Positions 15,901 through 46,618 of a DNA stretch of 64,000 nucleotides are shown here, piece after piece. Location of the stretch: IMG/VR virus record IMGVR_UViG_3300043786_000977, positions 1-64,000 of that record; one strand, written 5' to 3'. The position numbers and the translations under genes were made by a program. Below the pieces are notes generated by a model. That model made no database searches. It saw only the letters and a list, made by a program, of their open reading frames with translations, and had not been told where the DNA came from. Position 1 is the first letter of the stretch. Each line of letters starts with the position of its first letter.

Positions 15901-16059
15901 TTGACGAGCGTCGGTAATCTGGGGCCGCAACTCAATCTCACGCAGACCGAAATTGTTGAGATGCGCCAGCACCCGTTGCTGGAGGATCATGTGGTAGCTA
16001 CGGTAAACCTTGGAATGCCGAAGCCGTTCAACGTGTTCCAGTTGAAGTTAGTGGTGTAA
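12910..16059 (+). CDS. Contractile tail sheath protein (large, with inserted beta domains)
   Basis: 1049 aa; N-terminal YTLPQVQV; C-terminal ELSITKNLDSIS...YIGRYNIT...PKPFNVFQLKLVV sheath-type motifs. Confidence 0.8.
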   Translation: MSYTLPQVQVFQIFRQLPQNVVKNLNAFVFGPHYQLFRYAVAAEKELISLGAYAKDADVTYPWPNQPTNSVVDLGYVKLYAENVWAEYLAITAGNEAQIVSEEERNKVRVDDLVLKEANGYTRSAGILRDVAVGDRVRYSYTDLYDVVHTGTTKIVGLEADMIAAVVGDAAAKASNQADVTGTADLDSGATAPVTTPAGVMTLSAVYALAGIGSDDQFPGLLSAGVVEDTITITITTGGAKGTARATVAYASGMYTRENALIETAGSQEGQIYLGNNVYLEFEADSGEDTDFVEDTEFTVELAAVFTKPDAATFGVPSADYTGTSKTTYVLEVVRGGLFDRTVTVSKGLTNVADKVLKVGPGDSTTPDWTTWLGGDYDDEYILRCTGAGSVTVAKFTLVSQRGDNESTVMFSAADTDVTVGNRGLVAQLPAGTYSVGDYWVIRVNASRPQIKITDTAGIDATQFKTVADATLMDIGAYGVEFTPAANSNAEGGVDAQGGLRRGDVYYITCTPAVVDAVKTMVFADSLASGIPAGVDIALWLYMVKNGVEVTGKRTQVAPDYNWQGDVDDGITVYQDLQVQDDSWATEEGEHLWLDVYSATLYVEYRALLNSYTDTIHVMTDVSDVATTLGTVHPDNPLAQGVYNALLNSGDRAVYYMGVVSVDAAGWSRALDKATLSEDVYVFVPLTQDAAMLDLVKAHIDTLSTETEKHWRIGFFGATTPTEDPIYTKVSNPAGEDFLAQIALDSETAEYTLLTFVDADGDPSTYTEALDDLKAGDKVRINFATDAWGDATYAEFEVATVLTNTSLRLEAGPASAIDMPTKVEVIHPYTLAEMADAVAAQSNGYFSRRIYNVFPSQLGSNGVVMTGEFGAAAVAGLASSVPPQQPITNIEVNGFDDLPLVYQTYNRTQLNKMAEYGTMILMQDTAGGRIYVRHQVSTQAKDGNLNTTELSITKNLDSISYFFAAMFAPYIGRYNITPELIEVLRTQLVAGLNYLGSLTSVGNLGPQLNLTQTEIVEMRQHPLLEDHVVATVNLGMPKPFNVFQLKLVV

Positions 16060-27004: not shown

Positions 27005-27022
27005 TTGACGATAGGAGCATTT

Positions 27023-27724
27023 ATGCTTGAATATGACACATGGCAACAATCTCAGACACCTCAAAACCTTGCGCCGCTCATGCAAGCCTTGGATCCCGTG
27101 ATCAACGCTGAGATCCAGCGTTTCACCGGCCCGAAACCACTGCTGCGTGGGCGAGCGCGGGCCTTAGCAGTCAAGGCAATACGCTCGTACGATCCGACAG
27201 CCGGTGCACAATTGAAATCCTGGGTCGTTACCCAACTGCAACCCCTGTCACGTTATACACAGCAACTCAAACCCGTGCACGCGCCTGAGGTAGCCATTCG
27301 TCAGGCAGCTGAGGTGAATAGACAGAGACAGGAACTCAGCGAGGAACTGGGTTACGATCCGAGCTCTGAAGAGTTGGCAGATCAAACAGGATTGTCAGTC
27401 AAACGGATCAATTACGTTCAGAAGATCGTGCGGCCGACGATCGCAGAGGGTAGTATGTCTGAGACGGCCGAAGAGGACAACACGTCCACAGCGCCGGGTG
27501 TGTCTCAGCTGCATAAACTCTCGGTTGTGGAAGAAGCTGTCTTTGATTCGTTAAGTCCACGTGACCAGATGATCTTCGAGTGGAAAACAGGTAAACACGG
27601 TAAAGTGCAGTTAAGCAATCAGGAGATCGCGAAACGCCTGGGCGTAACGCCGGCACTCATAAGCCAACGCAGTCAGCAGATCGCATTACAGATTCAAGCG
27701 TTACATGAGAGAGGGATACTATAA
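27023..27724 (+). CDS. Phage-encoded sigma-70-family RNA polymerase sigma factor (regions 2-4)
   Basis: KAIRSYDPTAGAQLKSWV (region 2), ELSEELGYDPSSEELADQTG (region 3), LSPRDQMIF...SNQEIAKRLGVTPALISQ (region 4 HTH); ATG after AGGAG. Confidence 0.85.
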   Translation: MLEYDTWQQSQTPQNLAPLMQALDPVINAEIQRFTGPKPLLRGRARALAVKAIRSYDPTAGAQLKSWVVTQLQPLSRYTQQLKPVHAPEVAIRQAAEVNRQRQELSEELGYDPSSEELADQTGLSVKRINYVQKIVRPTIAEGSMSETAEEDNTSTAPGVSQLHKLSVVEEAVFDSLSPRDQMIFEWKTGKHGKVQLSNQEIAKRLGVTPALISQRSQQIALQIQALHERGIL

Positions 27725-28614: not shown

Positions 28615-30222
28615 ATGGCAGACCAATTGACTTTAGCAGACGTGACCCAAGAACAGTTCGATGTCGCAGAACGGATTGTTATCGATCTATTGCGGTCAGC
28701 CTATCCTACGTTGGATCAACGGCGCGGTACAGTAATCCGTGATACCCTCGTGCGGCCCGATGCATCGCTGACGGCACTGAGCCAGGAACGTGTTGAACGC
28801 CTACGTCGGTTGATTTCGTTGTCAACGATGGCTGAGGACGGTACTGCATCTGTTGAGGATGTAAATAAAATACTGGTTAACTTCAATATGCAAAGACAGA
28901 CGGGGACAGCAAGTACCGGTGTAATCAGAGTGAAGGTAAACGCTGCACGTACTTATACCATTCCTGTCGGTTTCACGTTCGCTGCCCTGACTGGCCTGCG
29001 TTATCGTACCCAGGTATTGACTGTAGTCAAACTGGATGCTACGGAGTCGTTGGGTGAAATACCGTTATTCACTGGTACAGATAACAGTTACTACTTCTTA
29101 TTGCCCGTGACAGCGGACGGTGTTGGTTCAGTGTTCAATATCCCGCAGGGTACCGCCATGGAGCCACGGACTCAGCTTTATGGGTTTGTGTCGGCGGTTG
29201 CATATACCAATTTCTCGGACGGGCACGACGCCGAATCAATAGCGTCAGCGATCTCACGTATTCCGGCAGCGATTTCGCACCGCGGTCTAACCAACAGGAC
29301 TGCGATTGAAGCACAATTACTCGATCGCTTCAACGGTACTGCTATCGTGCTGGAGGCCGTAAGCGTCCTCGGGTATGGCGACGCGGGGCAGTTGCGGGAT
29401 AAGCATAATGTATTTGGTGTTGCTGTAGGTGGTCGTGTCGACGTCTATCCACGCACGTTCGGTCTACCTGTGGTCCGTGTGCTGGAGAAAACCGGAACGC
29501 GTAGTGCGCAAGGTATTTATACGTTCGACATCGACGTGGCGGAAGCACCCGGGTACTACGCTATACGTACGATAACTGATAAAGACAGTGTGGCATTGAG
29601 TTCGTATGCGTACACGGAGAGCAGAGGTGCAAGTGGGTTGGATCAGACCTGGCATGATATTGATGCCGCTGATCCCGTGATTGAGACTGCGTATACTGTT
29701 TTTCAGACGTCAACGATTACACTAACAGAAGTACCAGATAACGCAGCAACACACGTATTTAAGGTGGAACTATACTGTGCCCCGGGCTTGACGGAGCTTC
29801 AGGCCTACATGGACGATCCTGCCGTGCGTAATATCACCGCAGACCTATTGGTGCGTAGTCCGCTAATCTGCTTGGTTACGTGTACCGCGGCACTGTACTA
29901 CGACCTACACACGCCGCTGGATTTAGCTGACCTTCAGCGTAAGATTGCAGCATATATCAATAGTCGCAGCTTCGTTTCACGGCTCACGCGTTCAGAGATC
30001 GTGTCAGTACTACTGGCGAATGGAGTAAAGCGCGTGGACCTGGATAGCGCGGGACTGCGGCTTGAAGGTCGTATTCGTGACGCCTCTGGTGTGTGGCATA
30101 CATTGACTGGGGATAGTCTGGATCTCACCAGTATCCAGGATGCCGATGTATTGCTCGTACCTGAGACGTGTGTCTTCGCAGCTGAGATACAGAACATACA
30201 CTTGGTAGGGGTGGCTGAATAA
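28615..30222 (+). CDS. Baseplate J-like (gp6-like) wedge protein
   Basis: GTVIRDTLVRP, ASTGVIRV, TIPVGFTF, GSVFNIPQG, FSDGHDAES and GGRVDVY motifs. Confidence 0.8.
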   Translation: MADQLTLADVTQEQFDVAERIVIDLLRSAYPTLDQRRGTVIRDTLVRPDASLTALSQERVERLRRLISLSTMAEDGTASVEDVNKILVNFNMQRQTGTASTGVIRVKVNAARTYTIPVGFTFAALTGLRYRTQVLTVVKLDATESLGEIPLFTGTDNSYYFLLPVTADGVGSVFNIPQGTAMEPRTQLYGFVSAVAYTNFSDGHDAESIASAISRIPAAISHRGLTNRTAIEAQLLDRFNGTAIVLEAVSVLGYGDAGQLRDKHNVFGVAVGGRVDVYPRTFGLPVVRVLEKTGTRSAQGIYTFDIDVAEAPGYYAIRTITDKDSVALSSYAYTESRGASGLDQTWHDIDAADPVIETAYTVFQTSTITLTEVPDNAATHVFKVELYCAPGLTELQAYMDDPAVRNITADLLVRSPLICLVTCTAALYYDLHTPLDLADLQRKIAAYINSRSFVSRLTRSEIVSVLLANGVKRVDLDSAGLRLEGRIRDASGVWHTLTGDSLDLTSIQDADVLLVPETCVFAAEIQNIHLVGVAE

Positions 30223-35593: not shown

Positions 35594-36508
35594 ATGCCAG
35601 CTATTTTACAACAAGAATGGTTGAATCAGAACGCAGGTCGTGCATATCCTTTTCAGGAGAACGCGACCCGCTACCCGCATGATGTTAACGGGCGCCAGTT
35701 GACATCGCTGGCATTGCCTAACTATGTCATCGTCGATATGATCTTTACGATGCCAGGACCGAGTGACCTACGGATGTACCTGGCACAGTTTGCACGGGCC
35801 GGTAATCTTTTGACCTGTGTCTTCCGTGAGACGGGTACAAACGCCATCGTAACCACGGTAACGTTTGATGCTAATACGCATGTACCAGGTACGGGGTATA
35901 GTCTGGCAGGTACCGCGGATTGGTTTGATGCCCGTGGCTGGTTGACGATCGGTGATCTACGGAAGTTAGCTGCTGACATACCCGAGGGGCTGTATAACTA
36001 CGAACCTGAGCAGACCCTGTTGGAAACGCGGGTTGTACGGCCGGCATTACGGGGTATCCGTAGTCTACGCGTAGTTAATCAGGATAACACGTCTGACTAT
36101 TTGTACGGCCACGTTAAGCTACTGGCAGGGGATAACGTGCGGCTCCAGTACGATCGAGAGCTAAACGGCGTATGGATTAATGCAGAGCCCAATGCGGGGT
36201 ACCGGGAAACATGTGACTGTGAATCACCAGCACAAACGAACCTGGTAAATACGGTCAACGGTATACCCGCCGAACACTTAACCATTGTCGGCGACGGAGA
36301 ATGTGTTGAAGTACGTACTGAAGGTGATAAGATCATCATTTCGGACAAATGCTCGGAACCGTGTTGCGGGTGTCCTGAACTGGAGTTCCTCACTGAGTCC
36401 GTGAAGGTGTTAGATGCAAGCCTGTCGCGGTTGGAATACTATTCGGAACAATTGGCCGAACGCATCTCAACGTTTGTAACTAACTTCGTGTTAACGGTGT
36501 CACGCTAA
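35594..36508 (+). CDS. Tail-associated paralogue 1 (EWLNQNAGRAYPF family)
   Basis: Shared N-terminal motif; CSEPCCGCPEL followed by a coiled coil. Confidence 0.6.
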   Translation: MPAILQQEWLNQNAGRAYPFQENATRYPHDVNGRQLTSLALPNYVIVDMIFTMPGPSDLRMYLAQFARAGNLLTCVFRETGTNAIVTTVTFDANTHVPGTGYSLAGTADWFDARGWLTIGDLRKLAADIPEGLYNYEPEQTLLETRVVRPALRGIRSLRVVNQDNTSDYLYGHVKLLAGDNVRLQYDRELNGVWINAEPNAGYRETCDCESPAQTNLVNTVNGIPAEHLTIVGDGECVEVRTEGDKIIISDKCSEPCCGCPELEFLTESVKVLDASLSRLEYYSEQLAERISTFVTNFVLTVSR

Positions 36509-37821
36509 TGGCAATCCAGGTTGAATATCTTAATTCAAACACAGCGATCGCCTTCCCATTCTGTGAGAACGCGACCGGTTTGAAGCGGTCTGTCGATGAT
36601 CTGTTCGCGATGCCTTTGGATGTTTTCGTTGACGCAGCCTTTGAAGTACCACATGACTTTGCAGCGACCAAGCGCCTCTATCTGATGGGCTGCTATTACG
36701 TGGACGCTGATACGCTCCTGGCATCGATTGGAGATGGCACATCGGCTGTCGTCGATGTGACGATTGTCGCTGCCGGCGTTTTTACTGCTGCGACAGCCGT
36801 GGATAATGGTGTAACGGCACGGTTGGTTGTCGACTCTGTTGCCTTGCGTACGTACTTGGCAGCCATGGAATCACCAATCGCTTACGGGACATCCCTGCCC
36901 TTCGAGCCTGGTACGCAGGCTGTTATTAATCCGCAGGTACTGTCGTTCGCGCTGTATAACAACGGCCCGCTACAACCACCAGAAGAAGGTACGTTGTCTG
37001 GTGATGTGCGCATCTTGAGTGGGTATAATGTCGGGGTCAATATCGACGTTATTGAAGACGATACAGTACCGATCGATATCAATGCACTCCCGGGTCTAGG
37101 TCTAGGTACCTTACCCTGCACAGAAGCTGATCCTCCGTTTACAAACGTACCGCCGGGCATGGTACCCAATAAAGGCAATATTCGGTTTGTGCCTGGAGAA
37201 GAGGGTTGTTACGTCGTGGTCGTTAACCCGACGAGCAATCTGATTCAGATTCAAGGACGGTGTCAGGCGTGCTGTACGTGTGAAGACATGACTGATATGC
37301 TCGGCGTTCTTAATGTGATCGGAACACGTATCCTGGCCGTGCAAACGTTACTGAACAGTGGGCGCGCTACTTATGAAGATGGGGTCACACGGTTCAACAA
37401 GTTTATCTCTACAGACTATACCACAGTGACAATGAAGGCAAATGGGATGCGTGGTTCAGATTGGGATACCGGGGATACCAATCGCGGTTCGCCTAATTGG
37501 GCGCGTGTTGTAATGAGTGTCAACAACCGCCGACCGAACCCTGCCGAGATTACATCGTGGAAGATGACGTTCTATAACCCAGCTGATGTTACTTATGAAG
37601 ACGTCTCGTGGTCGTACGCGGGTACAGGCGGCAAGACAGCGATGGGCGGTGCACTCCCCATACTCGCCGTTGATCGGAGTCTGGCAGTCACGTTACTGGT
37701 AAGTGTGACATTTCAACAGTGGCGGCAGAATCCACGGTGGTCTGCCCTGATTGAGGTCGAGGCGACCGACACGGTGACAGGTGTCAAAGACGTCATGACA
37801 CAGACGTTGGAGTTTTCATGA
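36508..37821 (+). CDS. Tail-associated paralogue 2 (EYLNSNTAIAFPF)
   Basis: Shared motif; CQACCTCED followed by a coiled coil and a beta domain. Confidence 0.6.
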   Translation: MAIQVEYLNSNTAIAFPFCENATGLKRSVDDLFAMPLDVFVDAAFEVPHDFAATKRLYLMGCYYVDADTLLASIGDGTSAVVDVTIVAAGVFTAATAVDNGVTARLVVDSVALRTYLAAMESPIAYGTSLPFEPGTQAVINPQVLSFALYNNGPLQPPEEGTLSGDVRILSGYNVGVNIDVIEDDTVPIDINALPGLGLGTLPCTEADPPFTNVPPGMVPNKGNIRFVPGEEGCYVVVVNPTSNLIQIQGRCQACCTCEDMTDMLGVLNVIGTRILAVQTLLNSGRATYEDGVTRFNKFISTDYTTVTMKANGMRGSDWDTGDTNRGSPNWARVVMSVNNRRPNPAEITSWKMTFYNPADVTYEDVSWSYAGTGGKTAMGGALPILAVDRSLAVTLLVSVTFQQWRQNPRWSALIEVEATDTVTGVKDVMTQTLEFS

Positions 37822-38513
37822 GCGCAAGTTATATCGAGTGGTGTAACGAGAATGAGGGACGTGGTTATCCAATCGCGGAAGCGGCCTCCCGTGTGGACGA
37901 TAACGGTACCCAGTTGCCGAGTGATATCTTGGCTGACCTGGGGTTGCTGTTACCATCAAACTACACGGGGTTGCGGCTTAGTTCATTGTATATCTCGTCC
38001 ACGCTCATATCGTTATCGATCAGTGCTGACGTCGGTGGTTTACTGACAGCAACATTCGCTAAGGCGTCCGTAGTACCCTATACTGCGTATGCGTTGACGC
38101 CGTACCCTGGCGTGGACGATGTTAGTGGTTGGGTGGTGTTCGGTAATTACAAACACCACGGTTCGGTGCCATTGTATGTGCGTTTCACTACCGCGGTACA
38201 GAGTGGTTTAGAGTTACGTACGGTCCGTGTTATACCGCCGCCCGGCGTGAAGCGTTTCCAGCGTGTTAATAATGATCCTAGCATCTACGCTACCGGGATT
38301 GTAGACTTCTTGCCCGGATCACAGTTTGTTGTCGAGGTAGATCCCGACAATCCGCAGAACATCATTGTACGCTTGCACGGGGACGTAAAGTCGCGGTATA
38401 TTGAACCTTGTACACGGCCGGCGGCAGCCGGGACATGTGCGGTACCGCCCTTGAGACGTATAAACGGGGTACCCCCAGATGCAGACGGGGTCATTACATT
38501 GAGGTTCGAATAA
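37818..38513 (+). CDS. Tail-associated paralogue 3 (EWCNENEGRGYPI)
   Basis: Shared motif; C-terminal INGVPPDADGVITL. Confidence 0.6.
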   Translation: MSASYIEWCNENEGRGYPIAEAASRVDDNGTQLPSDILADLGLLLPSNYTGLRLSSLYISSTLISLSISADVGGLLTATFAKASVVPYTAYALTPYPGVDDVSGWVVFGNYKHHGSVPLYVRFTTAVQSGLELRTVRVIPPPGVKRFQRVNNDPSIYATGIVDFLPGSQFVVEVDPDNPQNIIVRLHGDVKSRYIEPCTRPAAAGTCAVPPLRRINGVPPDADGVITLRFE

Positions 38514-39553
38514 TGCCAGTGGTACTATTAACCGAGTATGAGAACCAGAATCAGCGTCGCCATTACCCATTCGTCGATAACGCAACGATGAAGGATGATG
38601 ACGGGATGGCGCTACCCGCTGACTTCTTGGTTGATGCACACCTCTATCCACTGGATCCTATCGGGGGCGTCTACATTGCCAAGATTGAAGGCGGGACGAC
38701 GATTCAGTTTGCAGATACAGCGACGCGTAAGGTCTTTGGTGAGGCTGTCTACACCCCAGGCGCGCCTACTGCAGAGGTTGTGGAGACAGGGCTGTACGGA
38801 CGACAGGTAGGCTTGCTCGTCTTCGGTCCGGGGGTTGCTGATATCATTCGGGGACGTGGACAACGTACCTTTCGACCCGAAGCAACAACACTGACACCGA
38901 CGGCATATACTCCGATCAAACAGGTCGGCGTTCGTGGCGTACGGTTAGCTGACGGTACTCTGATAACAGGTGATATCAGTTTCGAGGGTCGGGACGGTGT
39001 GTTGATAACCAGTCGTATCGACGACGGCAAACATATGCTGCGTTTCGATGTGTTAGGGGTACCGCCGAATATGGAAGATTGCGGTGAAGATCCATTGATC
39101 TGTACCGTTGTCGTTGAACGGGTCCCCGGTAGTTGTTTCGTAACGAGCAAGTATGACGACTACACACTGGCCCTGACAGCAAATGGGTTGACCCTGGATG
39201 ATATCTGTGCAGCAGGCAAGGCACGCCGGCGCCCTAGTGACACGGATCCGTGCGCCGAGCCTGGACCCCCGCCGGTACCTACGCCACCAGGCGACGCAGC
39301 AACACAGCGGTTTGAGATTTGTGATATGCGGGTGGGTACGTTCATGATCGTAACGCCGTCAACGATCGGGAACCGTAATCCGATCTTTGTGAGTCCGTTG
39401 GAGGTTGCGACGATGCCTAATCGCCTGACACTACCCCCGATTACGACCGTAGACGACGCGACGGCCGCGGCTGAACGGTTCCGTTCACCAGAAGTAATGT
39501 CAGGCGGTCTGATTATTGGATTCCAAGGTATTGGAAAGGGCCAATTACCATGA
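38513..39553 (+). CDS. Tail-associated paralogue 4 (EYENQNQRRHYPF)
   Basis: Start at the TAATG overlap (38513) places the motif at the N-terminus, as in its neighbours. Confidence 0.6.
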   Translation: MPVVLLTEYENQNQRRHYPFVDNATMKDDDGMALPADFLVDAHLYPLDPIGGVYIAKIEGGTTIQFADTATRKVFGEAVYTPGAPTAEVVETGLYGRQVGLLVFGPGVADIIRGRGQRTFRPEATTLTPTAYTPIKQVGVRGVRLADGTLITGDISFEGRDGVLITSRIDDGKHMLRFDVLGVPPNMEDCGEDPLICTVVVERVPGSCFVTSKYDDYTLALTANGLTLDDICAAGKARRRPSDTDPCAEPGPPPVPTPPGDAATQRFEICDMRVGTFMIVTPSTIGNRNPIFVSPLEVATMPNRLTLPPITTVDDATAAAERFRSPEVMSGGLIIGFQGIGKGQLP

Positions 39554-40302
39554 TGACACGTACGCCAGAGTGGTTAAACGCAAACCGATACCGCCGGTAC
39601 CCATTCCGTGACGACACGAACTTGACCTGTACCGGGAGCCGGGCGTTGTCGAACGATGTGCTCCTAGATTGTCGCCTGGTCAGTTGTACGCGTGCACAGG
39701 CTGCGTTGTCGTTATTGGATGTTGAAGTTACGACCGGTCAGGCCTCTTTACTGTTTGCTTTCGGTTATGACAATTGCCTGTTCTGTGTGACTGTACCCGC
39801 CGCAGCTAGTTACCCGTATACGGTAACAGGTAGTTCGCTCGGACTGCAGTATACCCTTATCTTCGGCGAGGGCTGTAAGACGTTACTGGCATGGCCTGTG
39901 GGTATGTACAACCTGATAGAGTCGCCAGTCTTGCAGCCGGCCCTTACCGTGGTCCAGGACCGCCATCGTGTCGATACCGTGCGTGCCACGGGTGAAGGAC
40001 AAACAACGTTGTCCGGGCTTGTGTACATCGAACCGGGATATAACTGCGAACCAGTGGTCATGCCCAACAAGATCCGGTTATCGGCTGGTTTAGGTTACGG
40101 TGCAGGTCGTTATTGTAATTCACTCAGCGATGCTGTAAGATCTTGTGCTGAAGCCATCCTTTGGGTAAACGGACAGAACGCAGATGAAGCCGGTAACTTG
40201 CCCCTTGTCGGTGGCCCTGGTGTTGAGGTTGAAAGCCAACCTGATCAGAATCGAGTCGTGATACGTGGTAATACGTTACTAGAACAGACGAAGTGTGGAT
40301 AA
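39550..40302 (+). CDS. Tail-associated paralogue 5 (EWLNANRYRRYPF)
   Basis: Shared motif; C-terminal VNGQNADEAGNLPL. Confidence 0.6.
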   Translation: MMTRTPEWLNANRYRRYPFRDDTNLTCTGSRALSNDVLLDCRLVSCTRAQAALSLLDVEVTTGQASLLFAFGYDNCLFCVTVPAAASYPYTVTGSSLGLQYTLIFGEGCKTLLAWPVGMYNLIESPVLQPALTVVQDRHRVDTVRATGEGQTTLSGLVYIEPGYNCEPVVMPNKIRLSAGLGYGAGRYCNSLSDAVRSCAEAILWVNGQNADEAGNLPLVGGPGVEVESQPDQNRVVIRGNTLLEQTKCG

Positions 40303-42898
40303 TATGCGTGATCCTTTTCAAATGTCAGGTGATTGCCCGGTACTGGTCGTCGATCTCGGTATCCTGGAGAATCTGCCGATTTGCAGTATTCCTGGGTTCA
40401 CGAGTCCAACACACGCGATTCGGTTACCCGAACTAAACCCACCAGATATTGCAGCGCCGGATATCTGTTTCTGTATTAGTGTGGACGTACAAACCTCGAA
40501 GAACTATTTGGTTAATTCCTTCAGTGGACGCTGGTCACGTAAGACTGATGACTGTTGCGACGCGCAGTACAACCTGTCACTCAATCTAGATGTACCCTGT
40601 ATGCCGTTGAGCGTAGCAGCATCCCAAGCTGTCAAGATCACAACTGACACAGTGCCATATTTGAACGTCACACTCGGCAAGACTGCCACTGCCCCGGAGT
40701 GCGCCCTGAGTTTGTTCGTTTCGCTCGACATCCCTTGCATGCCCTTGAGTGTCAGGGTTTCCCATACAGTTGCGTTGAAAGATACCGCCGTACCACATCT
40801 TAAGGTTGACTTTGGCAAGACGGGTACTGCTTCTGTATGTGCTTTAAGCCTGTTCGTCTCTCTTGACATTCCGTGTATGCCCCTGAGTGTCAGGGTTTCC
40901 CATACAGTTGCGTTGAAAGACACCACCGTACCACATCTGCGGGTAGACTTCGGTAAGACCGCAACTGCCTCTGAGTGTGCTTTAAGCTTGTTTGTCTCGT
41001 TGGATATACCTTGCATGCCCTTGAGCGTCAGGGTATCGAAGACTGTCGCACTGACAGACGACATAGAACCACACCTCCGGGTGGACTTCGGGAAAACAGG
41101 CACTGCGTCGGAATGTGCGTTGAGTTTGTTTGTCTCGTTGGATATACCTTGCATGCCCTTGAGCGTTAGGGTCTCGAAGACCGTTGCGTTAACAGATGAC
41201 GCGGCGCCACATCTTAAGGTTGACTTCGGCAAGACTGGAACAGCTTCTGAATGTGCTCTGAGTTTGTTTGTCTCGCTCGACATTCCGTGTATGCCTTTAA
41301 GCGTCAAGGTCTCACATAATGTGGCGTTGACAGACGACGTAGAACCACATCTGCGGGTAGACTTCGGCAAGACTGGTACTGCCTCGGAGTGCGCGCTGAG
41401 TTTGTTTATTTCCCTAGACATCCCTTGTATGCCTTTAAGCGTCAGGGTATCGCACACCGTCGCATTGAAAGATACCGACGAGCCGCACCTACGTGTAGAC
41501 TTCGGTAAGACCGCAACTGCCTCAGAGTGTGCGCTGAGTTTGTTTATCTCCCTAGACATCCCCTGCATGCCTCTGAGCGTCAAGGTCTCACATAATGTGG
41601 CGTTGACAGACGACGTAGAACCGCATCTTCGGATTGACTTCGGGAAAACCGGAACAGCCTCTGAATGTGCGCTTAGTCTGTTCGTCTCGCTCGACATTCC
41701 GTGTATGCCCCTGAGCGTCCGGGTCTCGAAGACCGTCGTACTGACGGATGCCGTCGAACCGCACCTCCGGGTAGACTTCGGGAAGACCGGAACAGCTTCC
41801 GAATGTGCTCTCAGCCTGTTCGTCTCTCTCGACATTCCGTGTATGCCTTTAAGTGTCAGGGTCTCCCACACTATAGGGTTAACAGACGACGCAGAACCGC
41901 ACCTCCGGGTAGACTTCGGGAAGACCGGAACAGCTTCCGAATGTGCTCTCAGCCTGTTCGTCTCTCTCGACATTCCGTGTATGCCGCTGAGTGTCAGGGT
42001 ATCGAAGACTGTCACGTTGACCAATGACACCGAACCGCATCTGCAGGTAGACTTCGGGAAAACAGGTACTGCCTCGGAGTGCACGTTGAGCCTGTTCATT
42101 TCCCTAGACATACCCTGTATGCCCTTGAGTGTTACCGTATCACACACTGTTGCGTTGACCAATGACACTGAACCGCACCTACGGGTGGACTTCGGTAAAA
42201 CAGGTACTGCCTCGGAGTGTAAGTTGAGTCTGTTCGTCTCGCTCGACATCCCTTGCATGCCGTTGAGTATTACAGCAGATCAGGCCGTACAGATTACGAA
42301 CAGTGTAGCACCGTATTTGAACGTCGCACTCGGTAAGACTGGAACTGCTTCTGACTGCACGTTGAGTTTGTTCGTCTCGCTTGATATACCCTGTATGCCG
42401 TTCAGCATCGGTCCCGCGTGGGATCAGACAGATGTCCCGTTCGGTAGCAACGGCCTATTCAACATTAACCTCCAATTGGTTAAGACCAATAAGCAACTGC
42501 GCATATCTGGTACCCTGGGTATTACCGAGGACGACTGTTGCACGCCAACCCCATGGGCGCCCTCAATCATCGGCAGTACCCTTACTATTGCCAACCCTAT
42601 CTACCTCCGTTCGCCGAAATATTTTGTCCCTGCAGATCTTACCTATAGTTTGGTGGTGAGTGATGGTGCTGGCGATTACTACTGTGGCGTCAAGATCAAT
42701 GTCATTAACGGCACTATCGATCCCACGCTTCTCATATCCAAGACGCTTTCTGACGTCGTCTACACTAGTCTCGCTGCGGCTCACGCTGACGCCGACTACA
42801 TGCGACTGCTCGTCTGTGTCGTTACTTACGATGCAGTAAACTTTACAATTAAACTACGCTGCATCAACAGCGTACCGGAGTTGGGTAACTACGCTTAA
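40295..42898 (+). CDS. Cys-containing repeat protein, putative fibre shaft
   Basis: 867 aa with 13 tandem 46-aa units; start at 40295 (GTG) or 40304 (ATG). Confidence 0.7.
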   Translation: MDNMRDPFQMSGDCPVLVVDLGILENLPICSIPGFTSPTHAIRLPELNPPDIAAPDICFCISVDVQTSKNYLVNSFSGRWSRKTDDCCDAQYNLSLNLDVPCMPLSVAASQAVKITTDTVPYLNVTLGKTATAPECALSLFVSLDIPCMPLSVRVSHTVALKDTAVPHLKVDFGKTGTASVCALSLFVSLDIPCMPLSVRVSHTVALKDTTVPHLRVDFGKTATASECALSLFVSLDIPCMPLSVRVSKTVALTDDIEPHLRVDFGKTGTASECALSLFVSLDIPCMPLSVRVSKTVALTDDAAPHLKVDFGKTGTASECALSLFVSLDIPCMPLSVKVSHNVALTDDVEPHLRVDFGKTGTASECALSLFISLDIPCMPLSVRVSHTVALKDTDEPHLRVDFGKTATASECALSLFISLDIPCMPLSVKVSHNVALTDDVEPHLRIDFGKTGTASECALSLFVSLDIPCMPLSVRVSKTVVLTDAVEPHLRVDFGKTGTASECALSLFVSLDIPCMPLSVRVSHTIGLTDDAEPHLRVDFGKTGTASECALSLFVSLDIPCMPLSVRVSKTVTLTNDTEPHLQVDFGKTGTASECTLSLFISLDIPCMPLSVTVSHTVALTNDTEPHLRVDFGKTGTASECKLSLFVSLDIPCMPLSITADQAVQITNSVAPYLNVALGKTGTASDCTLSLFVSLDIPCMPFSIGPAWDQTDVPFGSNGLFNINLQLVKTNKQLRISGTLGITEDDCCTPTPWAPSIIGSTLTIANPIYLRSPKYFVPADLTYSLVVSDGAGDYYCGVKINVINGTIDPTLLISKTLSDVVYTSLAAAHADADYMRLLVCVVTYDAVNFTIKLRCINSVPELGNYA
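40586..42400 (+). repeat. 13 full plus 1 partial tandem 138-bp coding repeats
   Basis: Unit LDIPCMPLSVRVSxTVALxDxxEPHLRVDFGKTGTASECALSLFVS; variation is mostly synonymous. Confidence 0.95.
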
Positions 42899-42910
42899 CA
42901 AGGGGATATT

Positions 42911-44818
42911 ATGACTGTTCGACAATATGCCGCAAGTGTGGTGATCAGTGCGGGTATCGCAATAACTGGCGTTATGTGGTATCAGAACCGTATGCCTTAT
43001 ATAGCTGGTGAGGATATTGCGGCACTAACTGCTGATGCCTATACTGTGCGTAGTGTTGTGATAAGCCCTGCTATTCGACAAGGTTATATGAGAGATGCAT
43101 GGACATACGGGAATGAAGATTATTGGTATCCCGGTGCTCCCGGTACTTGGGACTGGGTTTACAAACAGGTAGGCGAGACAACTATTACTGTGTTCAGAGC
43201 GTCATCTGATATTCAGAATTTATGTGCATTGGTGCAAGATTGTTTCATAGACGCAGATGCACCGGGCGCCCTTTTGGGAGGGACTTATCAGCGTTATTAT
43301 CTAGACCCCCGTTGCCTAAGCGGGGCGGCTGACGAATTGACAATGAAAATAACCCCACAATGGTCTAACACCCCAACATATACGTTATACATACCCGCCG
43401 GGAATTATAAGACAAACATAGTATTTTCAGGGACTATAACCAACATTGATGCTGATGGCGTAACACTATTAGATAGGATGACTACAGGGACTAATAAGTT
43501 TGGTGCACCGTCCGTTTATCTTTTTAGCGCCGCAGTAAATACGCCAATAAGCAGACTAGGCAGTATTTACAGGACGCCTCCACCCGTTTGGCCAGATATG
43601 ACGAGGTTTGATGGAAGGCAGAACTACACCGCATTTACAAACCGCCTGAATGGTTGCGCATCGTGGTGGACGTATGCAGGTATCTCACCTATATCCTATA
43701 TGCTGGAGCCACTCGAAGTATTGCGAGTTACTGATTGTAATCCTGTAAATCTGTCCTACGCATATATTGACTGGCGCAGTTACGAACTAGGGAAGAGTCC
43801 AGATAAAACGTTTACAGACCCCGGGGTTGGTGTCAGTGTGCGTCCAACTGCGTTTATAACGACAAACGGACTCAATGTTATCAGAAAAGTTCTGACGAAT
43901 ATGGTTAGAACTGTTGAATTCTCGCCAGTGTGTGTTGGCACAAATATAACATTCACGCATACAGCAACATACGGTGTAGAGTCTACCAATGGGTTTAGTA
44001 ATTCAGACCCAATCAACTACATTCCATTGGTGACTAATACACTTACTGCAAGCACAAATGCGTTGACTACCACGCTAACTGGGTATCAATTTTATTCTGC
44101 GGAGGAACGGTTATACAATCGACTTTACAAATATCCGTGGGCACCGACAAATTATGTGAGTTCTGCAGATTCGTCTGTGATCTGGACGCATTATAGTTTC
44201 TCACCTACTAATATCCCAATCTCGATGTATACGAACGGATTTGTTAAACGTGTTAGATTTTATGTTACCTGTGACTCGACTACTCCGATGCTCTGGTATC
44301 CACGGCTTAGTGTGTATTCCGACGCTGAAGTTACTTTAACTGGATTAACAGCGTATACCCGTGCAAGGCTGAACGAATACGAGTCCTATACTAATGACTA
44401 TCCGATAGTTGTAAATAATATGTTGGCTGATATAATGCCTGTTGGTGTCCCTAGTGACAATTACCGTTCTTGGGTATGGGTTACAGCTTTGAGTAATAGG
44501 GGGAAAAGTTTTGACAACTTCGCAACCAACCAGATATGGAACCTAATTGGTGATACGACTAACACACTGACAACCCCTGTATTTACGTTTACTAATGGGA
44601 AGTCCCAACTAGGTGATGTATCATTCAGAACGCCTACACAAATGGTAGAGGCGACAGGCCCAGAGATTGATCTTAAGTATCTAAAGGCTTATTGGCTATA
44701 CCACAAAATGCAAATAATGAAGACTATGATGGTAGTTGACTGGAATATCCCATTAATGAGCAATGGGGGCACGAATGTGTATACCCCTGCGTGGGCTACA
44801 ACCAACTCGGTGCCCTGA
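42911..44818 (+). CDS. T-N-rich, aromatic-rich protein with N-terminal hydrophobic segment (putative exported or receptor-binding protein)
   Basis: 635 aa; AASVVISAGIAITGVMWY at the N-terminus; about 19 TN dipeptides; visibly more AT-rich than flanking genes. Confidence 0.6.
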   Translation: MTVRQYAASVVISAGIAITGVMWYQNRMPYIAGEDIAALTADAYTVRSVVISPAIRQGYMRDAWTYGNEDYWYPGAPGTWDWVYKQVGETTITVFRASSDIQNLCALVQDCFIDADAPGALLGGTYQRYYLDPRCLSGAADELTMKITPQWSNTPTYTLYIPAGNYKTNIVFSGTITNIDADGVTLLDRMTTGTNKFGAPSVYLFSAAVNTPISRLGSIYRTPPPVWPDMTRFDGRQNYTAFTNRLNGCASWWTYAGISPISYMLEPLEVLRVTDCNPVNLSYAYIDWRSYELGKSPDKTFTDPGVGVSVRPTAFITTNGLNVIRKVLTNMVRTVEFSPVCVGTNITFTHTATYGVESTNGFSNSDPINYIPLVTNTLTASTNALTTTLTGYQFYSAEERLYNRLYKYPWAPTNYVSSADSSVIWTHYSFSPTNIPISMYTNGFVKRVRFYVTCDSTTPMLWYPRLSVYSDAEVTLTGLTAYTRARLNEYESYTNDYPIVVNNMLADIMPVGVPSDNYRSWVWVTALSNRGKSFDNFATNQIWNLIGDTTNTLTTPVFTFTNGKSQLGDVSFRTPTQMVEATGPEIDLKYLKAYWLYHKMQIMKTMMVVDWNIPLMSNGGTNVYTPAWATTNSVP

Positions 44819-44824
44819 ATGCGG

Positions 44825-44852
44825 TTGCAAGATCCAGAGAATCATGTATAAT
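44825..44852 (+). promoter_or_regulatory. Candidate sigma-70-type promoter
   Basis: TTGCAA-N16-TATAAT in the intergenic gap. Confidence 0.5.
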
Positions 44853-44875
44853 TAGAGTCGTAACTAGGAGACTTG

Positions 44876-45274
44876 ATGAGTGCAACACTGACAGTTGAGT
44901 ATCATAAATCATCAGAACAAAAGTCGTTGTTCGGCTTTGCTCTGCGTGTTGTCGTTACCAATGCAGTCGATATGCCTGCAGAGGTCTTCATCTTCCAACG
45001 TGGTGCCACGCCGGCACCCGCTATTGGTGAAACCGTGCGCGACGGGTTCGTTGCCATCGCCGATCCTGTTGATCTGGAGGAGTTACCTGTGGGCGCCCCG
45101 GACCTGGCGAATGAGATTCCCTACTATCGGCTAGCGGAAGTCACACTGGCATTCCGCAGTATGCTCGATCTGGAAGACACGCGACAGTTGATCGCTAACG
45201 ATCTACAGATGCTTGTGCATTCGCTACAGGCAATGGATACATTTGAACTGACTGATACTGTAACGTACGAATGA
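44876..45274 (+). CDS. Hypothetical protein
   Basis: AGGAG RBS, 132 aa. Confidence 0.7.
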   Translation: MSATLTVEYHKSSEQKSLFGFALRVVVTNAVDMPAEVFIFQRGATPAPAIGETVRDGFVAIADPVDLEELPVGAPDLANEIPYYRLAEVTLAFRSMLDLEDTRQLIANDLQMLVHSLQAMDTFELTDTVTYE

Positions 45275-45281
45275 GGTACCC

Positions 45282-45617
45282 ATGTCGACTGAAGTTACTG
45301 CCGTGAGACCTACGATATTGAGTCAGAGCCACGTGAGTCGTGCGATAAGCGATTCACGCTTCTACGAACTGCTGCCTGAGTTTCGCAGTCTACAGGTCAA
45401 ACTCCAGACTATGAAGGTCAATCTGTCAGCATCAGGTGGTTGCGGTGGTTGCCGTCAAAGACGGGCAGTCTCCAATCTATTCAACGATTTCCTAACAATC
45501 GCGTTTGCATTGAGCGATGACGGGAAGGCGCGGCTCAAGACGTACCTTGGAGCGCAGCAGCTAATGGTCAATCGTACGGATCCCGTAACACGACAAGTAC
45601 AACTACGTACTCTGTAG
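45282..45617 (+). CDS. Hypothetical protein with CxxC (GCGGC)
   Basis: GAGG RBS, 111 aa. Confidence 0.7.
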   Translation: MSTEVTAVRPTILSQSHVSRAISDSRFYELLPEFRSLQVKLQTMKVNLSASGGCGGCRQRRAVSNLFNDFLTIAFALSDDGKARLKTYLGAQQLMVNRTDPVTRQVQLRTL

Positions 45618-45625
45618 GAGGTTTC

Positions 45626-46618
45626 ATGAATACAAGTGATCGCATACCACTGATCCCGCCCACGCGGGTTAAGATTGCCGTCTCGATTCTGTCCGAGACA
45701 CAAGACTATAATCACCGTCTAATGAACATTCCGGCGATGTGGCGTAGTACACGCGGCGCTGGCGTCAAGGTCGCTATTCTGGATACAGGTCTGCCTAAGC
45801 ATGTCGATCTGTTACCCTCCGGTGGTAAGAGTTTTATTGAAGGGTATCTGCTCGATACAAACGGGCATAGTACACACTGCGGTGGTATTATCGCAGCAAC
45901 CGCCAATAACAATATGGGTGTGATGGGCATTGCACCGGACGTTGAAGACTGGTACGGGGCAGTCCTGGATGGTGATGGTCAAGGTAGTATTGATTCCATT
46001 ATCAACGGCATTCGGTGGGCTGTAGACGTTGTTGGCGCCGACATCATCAGTATGAGTCTAGGTATACCGGCCAATGCACGCTACGAACGAGCACTGGAAG
46101 CAGTGTGCCAGTATGCTGTGAACCAGGGCGTCGCAATATTTGCCGCGGCTGGCAACGAGTACGGTGCTGTGGGTCAGCCCGCGCAATACGATTGCGTATA
46201 CGCGGTTGCCGCAATCGATAAGAACTTCACACCAGCAGATTTCTCGAATCGGGGACAGTCAGTCGACTTTGCGGCCGGCGGTGTAGACGTCTTTTCGACC
46301 TACCTTAACGATACGTACGCCAAGTTGAGTGGTACGTCTATGGCTACTCCTGCACTCGTGGGTGTCGCAGCACTCATTCTCAGCGACGCCAGGCAGGGCG
46401 CACAGCCCCGTAAACTGACACCGGCTGAGTTGGGCGCCAAACTACGGAAGATAGCATTTGACGTCGGGCCTGCTGGCGTAGACGATGCGACAGGTATCGG
46501 AATTCCTGTCTTCCAGTCGTCAGGTACCGAACCCGTCGTACCACCTGTGGTAGTCCCGGGCTATCCGACTCACCGGCCCTGGTGGCAATACCTGTGGCCT
46601 GGTTATTGGTGTCTCTGA
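45626..46618 (+). CDS. Subtilisin-family (S8) serine protease
   Basis: Catalytic motifs VAILDTG, NGHSTHCGG and SGTSMATP; oxyanion AAAGN; AGGAGG RBS. Confidence 0.92.
   Translation: MNTSDRIPLIPPTRVKIAVSILSETQDYNHRLMNIPAMWRSTRGAGVKVAILDTGLPKHVDLLPSGGKSFIEGYLLDTNGHSTHCGGIIAATANNNMGVMGIAPDVEDWYGAVLDGDGQGSIDSIINGIRWAVDVVGADIISMSLGIPANARYERALEAVCQYAVNQGVAIFAAAGNEYGAVGQPAQYDCVYAVAAIDKNFTPADFSNRGQSVDFAAGGVDVFSTYLNDTYAKLSGTSMATPALVGVAALILSDARQGAQPRKLTPAELGAKLRKIAFDVGPAGVDDATGIGIPVFQSSGTEPVVPPVVVPGYPTHRPWWQYLWPGYWCL

What the first reader, a model, noticed from the sequence alone, without database searches (positions are those of the whole stretch)
40586..42400. Thirteen 46-aa repeats, each with two invariant cysteines: unusual fibre shaft
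Seen: 138-bp units with alternating hydrophobic beta strands and invariant PCMP and xC. Units 1 and 13 resemble each other (AVxIT..V.PYLNV.LGK) more than the inner units. Inner units are mosaics of a few variants with mainly synonymous changes. Inference: an extensible beta-fibre whose length varies by recombination, stabilised by Cys-Cys or metal links. It does not resemble collagen or T4/adenovirus shaft repeats that I know.
Basis: partly seen in the sequence, partly recalled or inferred. Interest (0 to 1): 0.6.

Follow-up and report, generated by a model that had tools for sequence, protein, structure and literature searches.

The report
New cysteine-bracketed phage tail-fibre repeat
A lake-water giant phage encodes what is most likely a tail fibre, whose shaft is built from 13-14 copies of a previously undescribed 46-residue beta module bracketed by two conserved cysteines; it belongs to an unstudied metagenome-only protein family.

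Summary
ORF 40304-42898 (+) carries 14 PCMP motifs at exactly 46-aa spacing. That gives 13 full units plus a truncated 14th, each unit with two invariant Cys.

Synonymous sites between the inner units are saturated (pS 0.72) while pN is 0.086, so this is a real, selected coding repeat.

The window is the start of a 209-kb terminally redundant jumbo myovirus from lakes. The gene lies just after the baseplate genes and five paralogous peripheral proteins.

No Pfam, PHROG, NCBIfam, PDB or GenBank-phage match exists. An exhaustive search found 95 metagenomic relatives. About 75 share a Cys-rich N-terminal domain followed by 1-12 such modules and then varied C-termini. Six of 60 carry collagen repeats, which implies trimers.

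Across the family the conserved core is C-x11-C-x-P. This is an amphipathic strand with both Cys on its hydrophobic face.

The C-terminal domain (aa 750-867) folds confidently into a beta-sandwich like phage RBP-shoulder, TssK and tail-fibre domains.

Assemblies carry 13, 12 or 10 units, and the breaks fall exactly at the two longest exact repeats (92 and 47 nt). Real recombinants and assembly collapse could not be fully told apart.

Verdict: a tail-fibre-like protein with a new shaft repeat, of moderate interest.

The parts
40304..42898 (+). Gene for the repeat protein. It is 864 aa from ATG 40304; the ORF listing starts it at GTG 40295, giving 867 aa = P0001.
   Evidence: ORF. All homologues begin M-R-x-P-F, aligned to the ATG at 40304, one base after the upstream stop. 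95 relatives found.
40304..40567 (+). Conserved Cys-rich N-terminal domain (P0001 aa 4-91), with motifs MRxPF, PxC(S/T)xP, PPDIAPP, CxC and DCC. Inferred to be the anchor to the baseplate or adaptor.
   Evidence: About 75 of the 95 hits align from residue 4-30 of the query. Invariant and near-invariant columns are listed.
40568..42361 (+). Thirteen full 138-nt (46-aa) units. Each is a C-x11-C-x-P amphipathic core strand plus a connector of about 30 aa predicted as a beta hairpin.
42362..42406 (+). Truncated 14th unit. It keeps only the core strand and the last PCMP, so there are 14 Cys-bracketed core strands in all.
42542..42895 (+). C-terminal beta-sandwich domain (aa 750-867). It is exchangeable across the family and also occurs at the end of short proteins of 176-294 aa.
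   Evidence: AF2 pLDDT is about 90 over this part. VIA Z 6.9-4.5 to cyanophage A-1(L) tail fibre, SPP1 gp22, phage 1358 and p2 RBP (N-terminal part), TssK, HFTV1 fibre and Mtd, with unrelated rows at 3.5 or below. BFVD hits are proteins named 'Receptor Binding Protein' or tail fibre. 13 hits cover the C-terminal part only.
41756..41985 (+). Two copies of a 92-nt exact repeat (41756-41847 and 41894-41985), spanning the junctions of units 9/10 and 10/11. This is the site of the 138-nt (one-unit) difference.
   Evidence: A Logan contig of run X3 skips 41755->41894, and L004 has the same skip.
41300..41622 (+). Two copies of a 47-nt exact repeat (41300-41346 and 41576-41622), in units 6 and 8. This is the site of the 276-nt (two-unit) difference in L004.
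35594..40302 (+). Five tandem paralogous genes (304, 437, 231, 346 and 250 aa) sharing an N-terminal E-W-L-N-x-N-x-x-R-x-Y-P-F motif. They are conserved upstream neighbours and presumably peripheral baseplate or fibre proteins.
   Evidence: Gene sizes and order are the same in the P0013 contig. A profile comparison found no relation to the repeat family.
42911..44818 (+). A 635-aa ORF directly downstream. It is absent at this position in the P0013 and P0004 contigs, so it is a variable accessory gene.
   Evidence: No Pfam, PHROG, NCBIfam or PDB match.
44873..45617 (+). A conserved pair of small genes (133 and 111 aa) that follows the fibre gene in every syntenic contig. They are candidates for assembly factors (inference).
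45626..46618 (+). Subtilisin-like S8 peptidase that closes the conserved block. In the P0004 contig a C1 peptidase sits in its place.
   Evidence: PF00082, E 1e-42. Synteny.

Best explanation
The gene at 40304-42898 most likely encodes a homotrimeric tail fibre, or baseplate-attached fibre, of an uncultured freshwater jumbo myovirus. It has three parts.

(1) A conserved Cys-rich N-terminal domain of about 90 aa. I infer that it docks the fibre on the baseplate or on the neighbouring adaptor proteins.

(2) A shaft of 14 core strands. Each is an 11-residue amphipathic beta strand bracketed by two cysteines that lie on the strand's hydrophobic face (C-x11-C-x-P). The strands are joined by 13 connectors of about 30 aa, predicted as long beta hairpins. 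Together these make the 13 x 46-aa repeat.

(3) A C-terminal beta-sandwich of the kind found in phage receptor-binding proteins (shoulder domain), tail fibres and TssK. Relatives carry other tips in its place, so it is the candidate for the part that binds the host or an adaptor protein.

Module number sets the fibre's length. It differs between related phages (1-14) and possibly within this phage's population (13, 12 or 10), through in-register recombination at the longest exact repeats.

The paired cysteines are structural. My preferred reading is that, once the virion is in oxygenated lake water, the Cys ending one core strand and the Cys starting the next form disulfides at each module junction. 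Axial metal sites are the alternative.

Shown: the repeat, the purifying selection on it, the family, the synteny and the C-terminal fold class. Inferred: the trimer, the fibre geometry, the Cys chemistry, the roles of the two end domains and the role of length.
For: Genomic setting: the record is a 208,908-bp virus with direct terminal repeats. A tail sheath (12910-16056) and a baseplate wedge protein (28615-30219) lie upstream on the same strand. The order of five paralogues, the repeat protein, genes of 133 and about 106 aa, and a peptidase is conserved in independent contigs.

Coding and selection: pS 0.72 against pN 0.086, and third-position variation in the + frame.

Family architecture: a constant N-terminus, a variable number of modules and variable C-termini, which is the usual layout of fibres. 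There are 95 relatives, about 75 of them with the N-domain, and 1-12 modules per protein.

Trimer: collagen triple-helix repeats lie C-terminal to the modules in 6 of 60 members. The structural relatives of the C-terminal domain are phage RBP, tail-fibre and TssK proteins; established knowledge has the p2 RBP and TssK as trimers.

Shaft: AF2 predicts only long beta strands, three per unit. Across the family the even positions between the two Cys are 90-99 % hydrophobic, the odd positions are polar and P11 is 97 % conserved.

Cysteine: both Cys are invariant in 13 of 13 units and in 60 aligned relatives. The protein has the highest Cys content in the window, 4.4 % against 0.2 % for the sheath.

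Length variation: L004 is identical to the window over 4.6 kb with no substitutions, apart from in-frame losses of 2 units and 1 unit at the 47-nt and 92-nt repeats. Run X3 has a contig with the same one-unit loss and no contig for the skipped part, while X1 and X2 carry it.
Against: There is no direct evidence that the protein is in the virion or that it is trimeric.

The monomer model is poor (pLDDT 61) and resembles only generic beta meanders. The ESM Atlas model of a homologue is unfolded (pLDDT 0.29).

The C-terminal domain matches the N-terminal 'shoulder' part of siphophage RBPs rather than their receptor-binding heads, and Z of 5-7 is only moderate. A receptor-binding role is therefore not established.

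Phage assembly takes place in a reducing cytoplasm, so any disulfides would have to form after release. Nothing here separates disulfide, metal and plain hydrophobic packing.

The 12- and 10-unit forms carry no substitutions relative to the window, and their breaks are where a de Bruijn assembler would collapse a repeat. They may be artefacts.

The saturated synonymous divergence leaves little substrate for ongoing recombination.
Confidence: 0.65

Rival explanations
1. The copy-number differences (12 and 10 units) are short-read assembly collapses. The array is static at 13 units in this phage, and length variation is only a slow, between-lineage process.
For: L004 has zero substitutions over 4.6 kb, and both of its gaps sit exactly in the two longest exact repeats. 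Logan contigs of X1 and X2 fragment at these same repeats. pS of 0.72 means most unit pairs cannot recombine easily.
Against: In X3 a 3.5-kb contig runs straight through the 92-nt repeat without branching. No contig covers the skipped 46 unique bases in that run, although the depth is about 7x. The one-unit loss is shared by X3 and L004, and L004 has an additional loss, a nested pattern expected of real lineages.
Confidence: 0.45
2. The paired cysteines bind metal ions rather than forming disulfides, for example three thiolates on the three-fold axis at each end of every core strand. This would be analogous in principle to the His-coordinated Fe/Zn sites on the axis of T4 gp37 and gp12 fibres.
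For: Both Cys lie on the buried face of the strand. In a parallel trimer, three equivalent Cys would meet at the axis, and an odd number cannot all pair as disulfides (inference). Assembly happens in a reducing cytoplasm, which favours metal over disulfide (established knowledge).
Against: There is no second ligand motif. The residue after the Cys (M, L or V) is not conserved as a ligand. Structural Cys3 sites are rare in natural fibres (my own knowledge). No computation here addresses metals.
Confidence: 0.2
3. It is not an intertwined trimeric shaft. Instead it is a single-chain string, or accordion, of small beta modules: a surface adhesin or decoration attached to the tail, with each consecutive pair of core strands stapled by one intrachain disulfide.
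For: AF2 places all strands of one chain in a continuous antiparallel meander. One Cys pair per unit of about 46 aa is typical of small extracellular disulfide-stabilised repeats (my own knowledge).
Against: The monomer model has low confidence (pLDDT 61, pTM 0.39), and single-chain predictors fail on homologues, as is common for obligate oligomers. Relatives continue directly into collagen triple-helix repeats, which require three parallel chains. No Ig-like, Big or other bead-domain family matches.
Confidence: 0.15
4. The repeat is not a real protein feature. It would be an assembly artefact, or the true gene is the 584-aa ORF on the opposite strand (40504-42258).
For: A long antisense ORF exists.
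Against: Variation is concentrated at third positions of the + frame (16, 11 and 42 variable columns by codon position). 95 protein relatives match the + frame. Every unit has a unique DNA sequence, recovered identically in four runs. The antisense ORF is simply a stop-free frame repeated 12 times.
Confidence: 0.02

Closest known systems
Modular phage tail fibres and receptor-binding proteins in general (conserved N-terminal anchor, repetitive shaft, exchangeable distal domain), e.g. T4 gp34-gp37 and T7 gp17
   Same: The position after the baseplate genes, a constant N-terminus with variable C-termini across relatives, a repetitive beta-rich middle, and collagen-containing relatives.
   Different: There is no sequence or profile similarity to any described fibre family. 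The 46-aa unit with two bracketing Cys is undescribed.
T4 gp37 needle and gp12 (trimeric beta fibres stabilised by metal ions on the three-fold axis through HxH motifs)
   Same: A possible functional analogy: periodic, inward-facing, potentially ligand-capable residues along a beta fibre (inferred).
   Different: The ligand type is Cys, not HxH. There is no homology, and no metal evidence was obtained. Membership is not supported.
Adenovirus fibre and reovirus sigma1 triple beta-spiral repeats; T4 gp5 and endosialidase triple beta-helix
   Same: They are repetitive all-beta trimeric shafts whose length is set by repeat number.
   Different: Their period is 15-20 aa (or 8 aa), against 46 aa here. 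They lack Cys brackets, and Pfam gives no match even at E<=10.
N-terminal 'shoulder' beta-sandwich of lactococcal phage p2 and 1358 RBPs, SPP1 gp22, T6SS TssK, and the cyanophage A-1(L) and HFTV1 tail fibres
   Same: The C-terminal domain (aa 750-867) has this fold class: Z 6.9-5.0 over 93-101 aligned residues. All eleven top rows are phage tail or T6SS baseplate proteins. BFVD hits agree.
   Different: Here the domain is at the C-terminus, not the N-terminus. Sequence identity is 5-11 % for the named proteins (up to 16 % for Mtd), Z is below 8, and no family model matches.
Collagen-like phage tail fibres (PF01391)
   Same: Six of 60 relatives carry G-X-Y repeats after the Cys modules, for example P0002.
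   Different: The window's protein has no G-X-Y repeat at all.

Membership tests
Phage tail fibre / baseplate-attached fibre (functional class) | Encoded in the tail/baseplate gene module | tested here: met
   The sheath (phrog_279) and baseplate wedge (phrog_6) genes lie upstream on the same strand. The synteny is conserved in three other contigs.
Phage tail fibre / baseplate-attached fibre (functional class) | Conserved N-terminal attachment domain with an exchangeable distal part among relatives | tested here: met
   About 75 of 95 relatives share residues 4-90, while the C-termini differ (collagen, other domains). The C-terminal domain also occurs on unrelated short proteins.
Phage tail fibre / baseplate-attached fibre (functional class) | Homotrimeric, elongated assembly | tested here: inconclusive
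The only indirect support is collagen repeats in 6 of 60 relatives and failure of monomer models.
Phage tail fibre / baseplate-attached fibre (functional class) | Present in the virion and needed for adsorption | not testable with these tools
   The phage is uncultured and known only from metagenomes.
Collagen triple-helix repeat (PF01391) | Runs of G-X-Y triplets | tested here: not met
   No Pfam hit for P0001 even at E<=10. The repeat is present only in some relatives.
Known fibre shaft repeats in Pfam/PDB (adenovirus shaft, T4-type fibre repeats, triple beta-helix, Ig-like/Big beads) | A profile or sequence match of the unit to the family model or to a solved chain | tested here: not met
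   Pfam at E<=10 on the whole protein, a 3-unit piece and the N-domain gave nothing. The best PHROG hit was a 26-residue match to a family of unknown function. NCBIfam gave nothing. A PDB search with the unit profile gave one hit at E 0.06 with no passing stretch, and a phmmer search of the whole protein gave none.
Metal-stabilised fibres of the T4 gp37/gp12 type | Periodic HxH motifs coordinating Fe/Zn on the trimer axis | tested here: not met
   The unit has no HxH motif and there is no sequence similarity. Whether the Cys bind metal cannot be tested here.
RBP-shoulder / TssK N-terminal / SPP1 gp22-like beta-sandwich (C-terminal domain only) | Shared fold with clear separation from unrelated folds | tested here: met
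   Z runs from 6.9 to 4.5 for 11 phage or T6SS baseplate proteins, and the next rows are at 3.5 or below. Foldseek probabilities are about 1.0 against p2 RBP and BFVD RBPs. Z below 8 means this shows fold class only, not homology.
RBP-shoulder / TssK N-terminal / SPP1 gp22-like beta-sandwich (C-terminal domain only) | N-terminal position in the protein, docking the trimer to the baseplate | tested here: not met
   Here the domain is C-terminal, at aa 750-867 of 867.

The most novel reading that the evidence does not exclude
The family would define a new structural class of trimeric phage fibre. Each 46-aa module contributes one buried amphipathic strand capped at both ends by cysteines. These would form a regular ladder of inter-module or inter-chain disulfides (or axial Cys3 metal sites) along a shaft tens of nanometres long. 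In natural lake populations, fibre length would be tuned in whole-module steps (13, 12, 10) by recombination at the few stretches of the array that have escaped synonymous scrambling.
Probability: 0.25. Interest if true: 0.65.

Novelty: new variant of a known kind. Interest (0 to 1): 0.45.

Why it matters
Tail fibres decide which hosts a phage can reach, and their shafts are a source of self-assembling, very stable protein rods. This is a shaft module with no relative in Pfam, PHROGs, NCBIfam or the PDB. It occurs in about 80 sequence clusters of uncultured, mostly large, phages.

It has an unusually clean signature: a perfectly amphipathic strand bracketed by two conserved cysteines. It also has an unusually regular 13-14-copy array that would suit structure determination.

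If the cysteines form a disulfide or metal ladder, that would be a new way of rigidifying a fibre outside the cell. If the 13/12/10-unit forms are real, the phage offers a natural example of fibre-length polymorphism in one population.

If neither holds, it is one more uncharacterised tail fibre from a metagenomic phage.

Tried and rejected

Monomer AF2 of the N-domain plus 5 units gave pLDDT 61 and pTM 0.39. Its best PDB matches are outer-membrane barrels and other generic meanders, with Z of 5.7 or less and mostly rmsd 8-14 A. I take this as no fold assignment, not as evidence for a barrel.

ESM Atlas searches gave nothing above the noise. The feature score for the repeat was 0.78. The Atlas model of homologue P0028 has pLDDT 0.29, and its nearest feature clusters are viral collagen-like proteins at 0.83, below the reliable range.

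No relatives were found in GenBank phages, by megablast of 8 kb or by tblastn of the protein. IMG/VR was scanned with the protein and with alignment A2, without result. Alignment A4 was too divergent to seed a scan.

The profile comparison of the family with the five upstream paralogues showed no relation. I therefore dropped the idea that the MRxPF start is a shortened version of their RxYPF motif.

An iterated HMM collection of units drifted and was abandoned in favour of a fixed motif count. Covariation or contact analysis was not attempted because there are too few independent units.

Literature searches for Cys-rich repeats in tail fibres, and for the most similar isolated phage (Salmonella phage Arash, sheath about 30 % identical), gave nothing relevant.

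Higher-order repeat structure was considered because TRF also reports periods of 276 and 414. The identity matrix shows no consistent 2- or 3-unit periodicity, so I rejected it.

No alternative genetic code was used.
Full report
**What is there.** The window is the first 64 kb of a 208,908-bp virus record with direct terminal repeats, judged complete. Nearly all genes are on the + strand. PHROG profiles identify a tail sheath (12910-16056) and a baseplate wedge protein (28615-30219). The only similar isolated phages are very distant: the sheath is 28-30 % identical to those of Salmonella phage Arash and three Vibrio phages. Sequencing runs that hold the stretch are lake-water and freshwater metagenomes from 23 studies, 2016-2025. 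The finding lies in ORF 40295..42898 (+), 867 aa, P0001. Homologues all start M-R-x-P-F at the ATG at 40304, one base after the upstream stop, so that is the likely start.

**Checking the observation.** PCMP occurs 14 times at exactly 46-residue spacing, and TRF finds the 138-nt period. There are 13 full units (40568-42361) and a truncated 14th (42362-42406). Seventeen of 46 columns are invariant, including both cysteines. Inner units 2-12 are 78-96 % identical as protein but only 69-86 % as DNA, and 42 of 46 third codon positions vary. By Nei-Gojobori, pS is 0.72, which is saturation, against pN of 0.086, giving dN/dS near 0.03.

The array is therefore a genuine coding repeat, with every unit held under strong purifying selection. 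It cannot be a recent duplication or an assembly artefact. Each unit has its own DNA sequence, and contig pieces from four runs of different studies match with no differences. The 584-aa antisense ORF is a by-product of a stop-free frame repeated twelve times.

The 'mosaic' remark also holds. Exact in-register runs of 92, 47, 41 and 37 nt link particular units, more than any of 300 column shuffles gave.

Units 1 and 13 do share a distinct variant, but only in the middle of the unit (positions 15-38). There they are 62 % identical to each other against 34-44 % to the inner units. The core of unit 13 is 89 % like the inner units.

**The family.** Pfam (even at E<=10), PHROGs, NCBIfam, PDB sequences and GenBank phages gave nothing for the protein, a three-unit piece, the N-terminal domain or a profile of the unit. 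Because the family scans left the protein open, I used the word search and then the exhaustive search. These gave 3 and then 95 relatives with E<=1e-3 among 1.84 billion representatives. Those checked are metagenomic and at best labelled 'hypothetical protein'.

About 75 of them share a Cys-rich N-terminal domain of about 90 aa, with the motifs MRxPF, PxC(S/T)xP, PPDIAPP, CxC and DCC. This is followed by 1-12 modules of the same kind with periods of 42-61 aa, and then by unrelated C-termini. The window's protein has the most modules and the only strictly regular array.

Six of 60 aligned members carry collagen G-X-Y repeats after the modules. Thirteen hits share only the C-terminal 120 aa, at the end of short proteins.

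Synteny is conserved. In a 57-kb contig the order is genes of 296, 449, 232, 346 and 272 aa, then the repeat protein (685 aa), then 133 aa, 104 aa and an S8 peptidase. This mirrors the window's 304, 437, 231, 346 and 250 aa, then 867, (635), 133 and 111 aa and S8. Two further contigs agree, one of them with a C1 peptidase in place of S8.

**Anatomy of the unit.** Across 100 modules in 38 other proteins the constant element is not the 46-aa period. It is C-x11-C-x-P. Positions 2, 4, 6, 8 and 10 between the cysteines are 90-99 % hydrophobic, the odd positions are polar, and position 11 is Pro in 97 %. Both cysteines are in phase with the hydrophobic positions, so they cap the buried face of one long amphipathic strand. 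This follows directly from the sequence pattern.

The first module uses the N-terminal DCC as its leading Cys (spacing x13/x14). The protein therefore has 14 complete Cys-bracketed strands joined by 13 connectors. AF2 predicts three strands of about 10 residues per unit: the core strand plus a hairpin made by the connector. Amino-acid variation among inner units is concentrated around positions 25-29, which fall in the gap between the two connector strands in that model.

The protein has the highest cysteine content in the window, 4.4 %. Its upstream neighbour has 4.0 %, the sheath 0.2 %.

**The two ends.** The C-terminal construct folded with pLDDT around 90 over aa 750-867. Without relying on Foldseek, its eleven best PDB representatives are all phage tail or T6SS baseplate proteins:
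- cyanophage A-1(L) tail fibre, Z 6.9;
- SPP1 gp22, Z 6.0;
- RBP of phage 1358, Z 5.7;
- TssK, Z 5.7;
- HFTV1 tail fibre, Z 5.5;
- p2 RBP residues 41-142, Z 5.0;
- Mtd, Z 4.5.

Unrelated proteins follow at 3.5 or below. Foldseek against PDB and BFVD points to the same group, including many proteins named receptor-binding protein.

The aligned parts of the siphophage RBPs are their N-terminal shoulder domains, not their heads. I therefore claim the fold class and the tail-periphery context, not receptor binding itself. The role of the N-terminal domain as anchor is inferred from its conservation.

**Oligomer and shaft fold.** The monomer model is weak (pLDDT 61) and resembles only generic beta meanders. 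The ESM Atlas model of a homologue is unfolded. This is the usual behaviour for obligate oligomeric fibres, but it is not evidence in itself. The best indirect argument for a trimer is that relatives run from the same modules straight into collagen triple-helix repeats.

**Length variation.** A JGI metagenome contig (L004, 4,617 bp) is identical to window 40145-45175 with no substitutions, except for two in-frame gaps. One gap is 276 nt (two units) and the other 138 nt (one unit), giving a 729-aa protein with 10 full units. The gaps lie exactly in the 47-nt and 92-nt exact repeats.

A Logan contig of run X3 shows the same 138-nt skip and runs unbranched through the 92-nt repeat. That run has no contig for the skipped segment at about 7x depth, whereas runs X1 and X2 contain it.

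This pattern is what homologous recombination would leave, and it is nested (X3 has one loss, L004 has that loss plus another). A de Bruijn assembler could collapse the same places, so I rate real polymorphism at roughly even odds.

Saturated synonymous divergence means that only four unit pairs offer an exact run of 30 nt or more in register. The array is largely protected from recombination rather than built for it.

**Mechanism I commit to.** It is a homotrimeric tail or baseplate fibre. The conserved N-domain anchors it, 14 stacked Cys-bracketed strands with hairpin connectors form the shaft, and the exchangeable C-terminal sandwich forms the distal or adaptor-binding end. Module number sets the reach. 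The cysteines at each module junction cross-link after release into oxic water, or alternatively bind metal on the axis.

My probabilities are about 0.8 for a fibre of the tail periphery, about 0.7 for a trimer, 0.4-0.5 for disulfides, about 0.2 for metal and about 0.3 for neither.

**Comparison and novelty.** It works like other modular phage fibres, but it fails every membership test for known shaft repeats (collagen, beta-spiral, beta-helix, T4-type, Ig-like). Only its C-terminal domain has a recognisable fold class. I rate it a new variant of a known kind: an uncharacterised, metagenome-only tail-fibre family with a new Cys-bracketed shaft module.

Interest is moderate (0.45), because novel fibre repeats are common in uncultured phages. 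This one, however, is unusually regular, widely sampled in lakes and experimentally tractable.

Noticed in passing
window 35594-40302 (+): Five consecutive paralogous genes (304, 437, 231, 346 and 250 aa) share an N-terminal E-W-L-N-x-N-x-x-R-x-Y-P-F motif and a later N-G-x-x-x-D-x-x-G-N-I-like motif. The first two carry Cys clusters (CSEPCCGCPE, CQACCTCED). They have no Pfam, PHROG or NCBIfam match, the same five-gene series recurs in a 57-kb relative contig, and they are unrelated to the repeat family by hhalign.
   Followed up: partly
window 45626-46618 (+); contigs of P0013 and P0004: An S8 subtilase closes the conserved fibre block. A relative has an S8 at the same place and another has a papain-like C1 peptidase instead. 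This looks like a non-orthologous replacement, which suggests that a protease activity is wanted next to the fibre genes, for maturation or for attacking the host surface.
   Followed up: partly
window 42911-44818 (+): A 635-aa ORF with no detectable relatives in Pfam, PHROGs, NCBIfam or the PDB sits between the fibre gene and the conserved 133/111-aa pair. Relatives have nothing, a 222-aa gene or a gene of more than 534 aa at this position, so it may be a variable accessory gene paired with the fibre's C-terminal domain.
   Followed up: partly
window 40504-42258 (-): A 584-aa open frame lies antisense to the repeat. It is a stop-free frame repeated with the unit, and the codon-position pattern shows that the + frame is the coding one.
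   Followed up: yes
window 27005-27721 (+): A 239-aa product inside the tail/baseplate block matches the C-terminal part of a PHROG annotated as an RNA polymerase sigma factor (phrog_351, E 2e-12), which is an odd place for such a gene. I did not examine it further.
   Followed up: no
window 12910-16056 (+): The tail sheath homologue is 1,049 aa. Only its last 150-450 residues match known sheaths, so it has a very large N-terminal extension of unknown nature.
   Followed up: no
window 39550-40302 (+): The gene immediately upstream of the fibre (250 aa) is almost as Cys-rich (4.0 %) as the fibre itself (4.4 %), and a gene of similar size (238-272 aa) precedes the fibre in four relative contigs. 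That makes it a candidate adaptor for the fibre's Cys-rich N-terminal domain.
   Followed up: no
window 39600-43400; runs X1-X5: Contig pieces from lake metagenomes of different studies and years (2016-2024) match this stretch with zero nucleotide differences. This suggests a very stable, widely distributed phage genotype, or repeated sampling of related lakes.
   Followed up: partly
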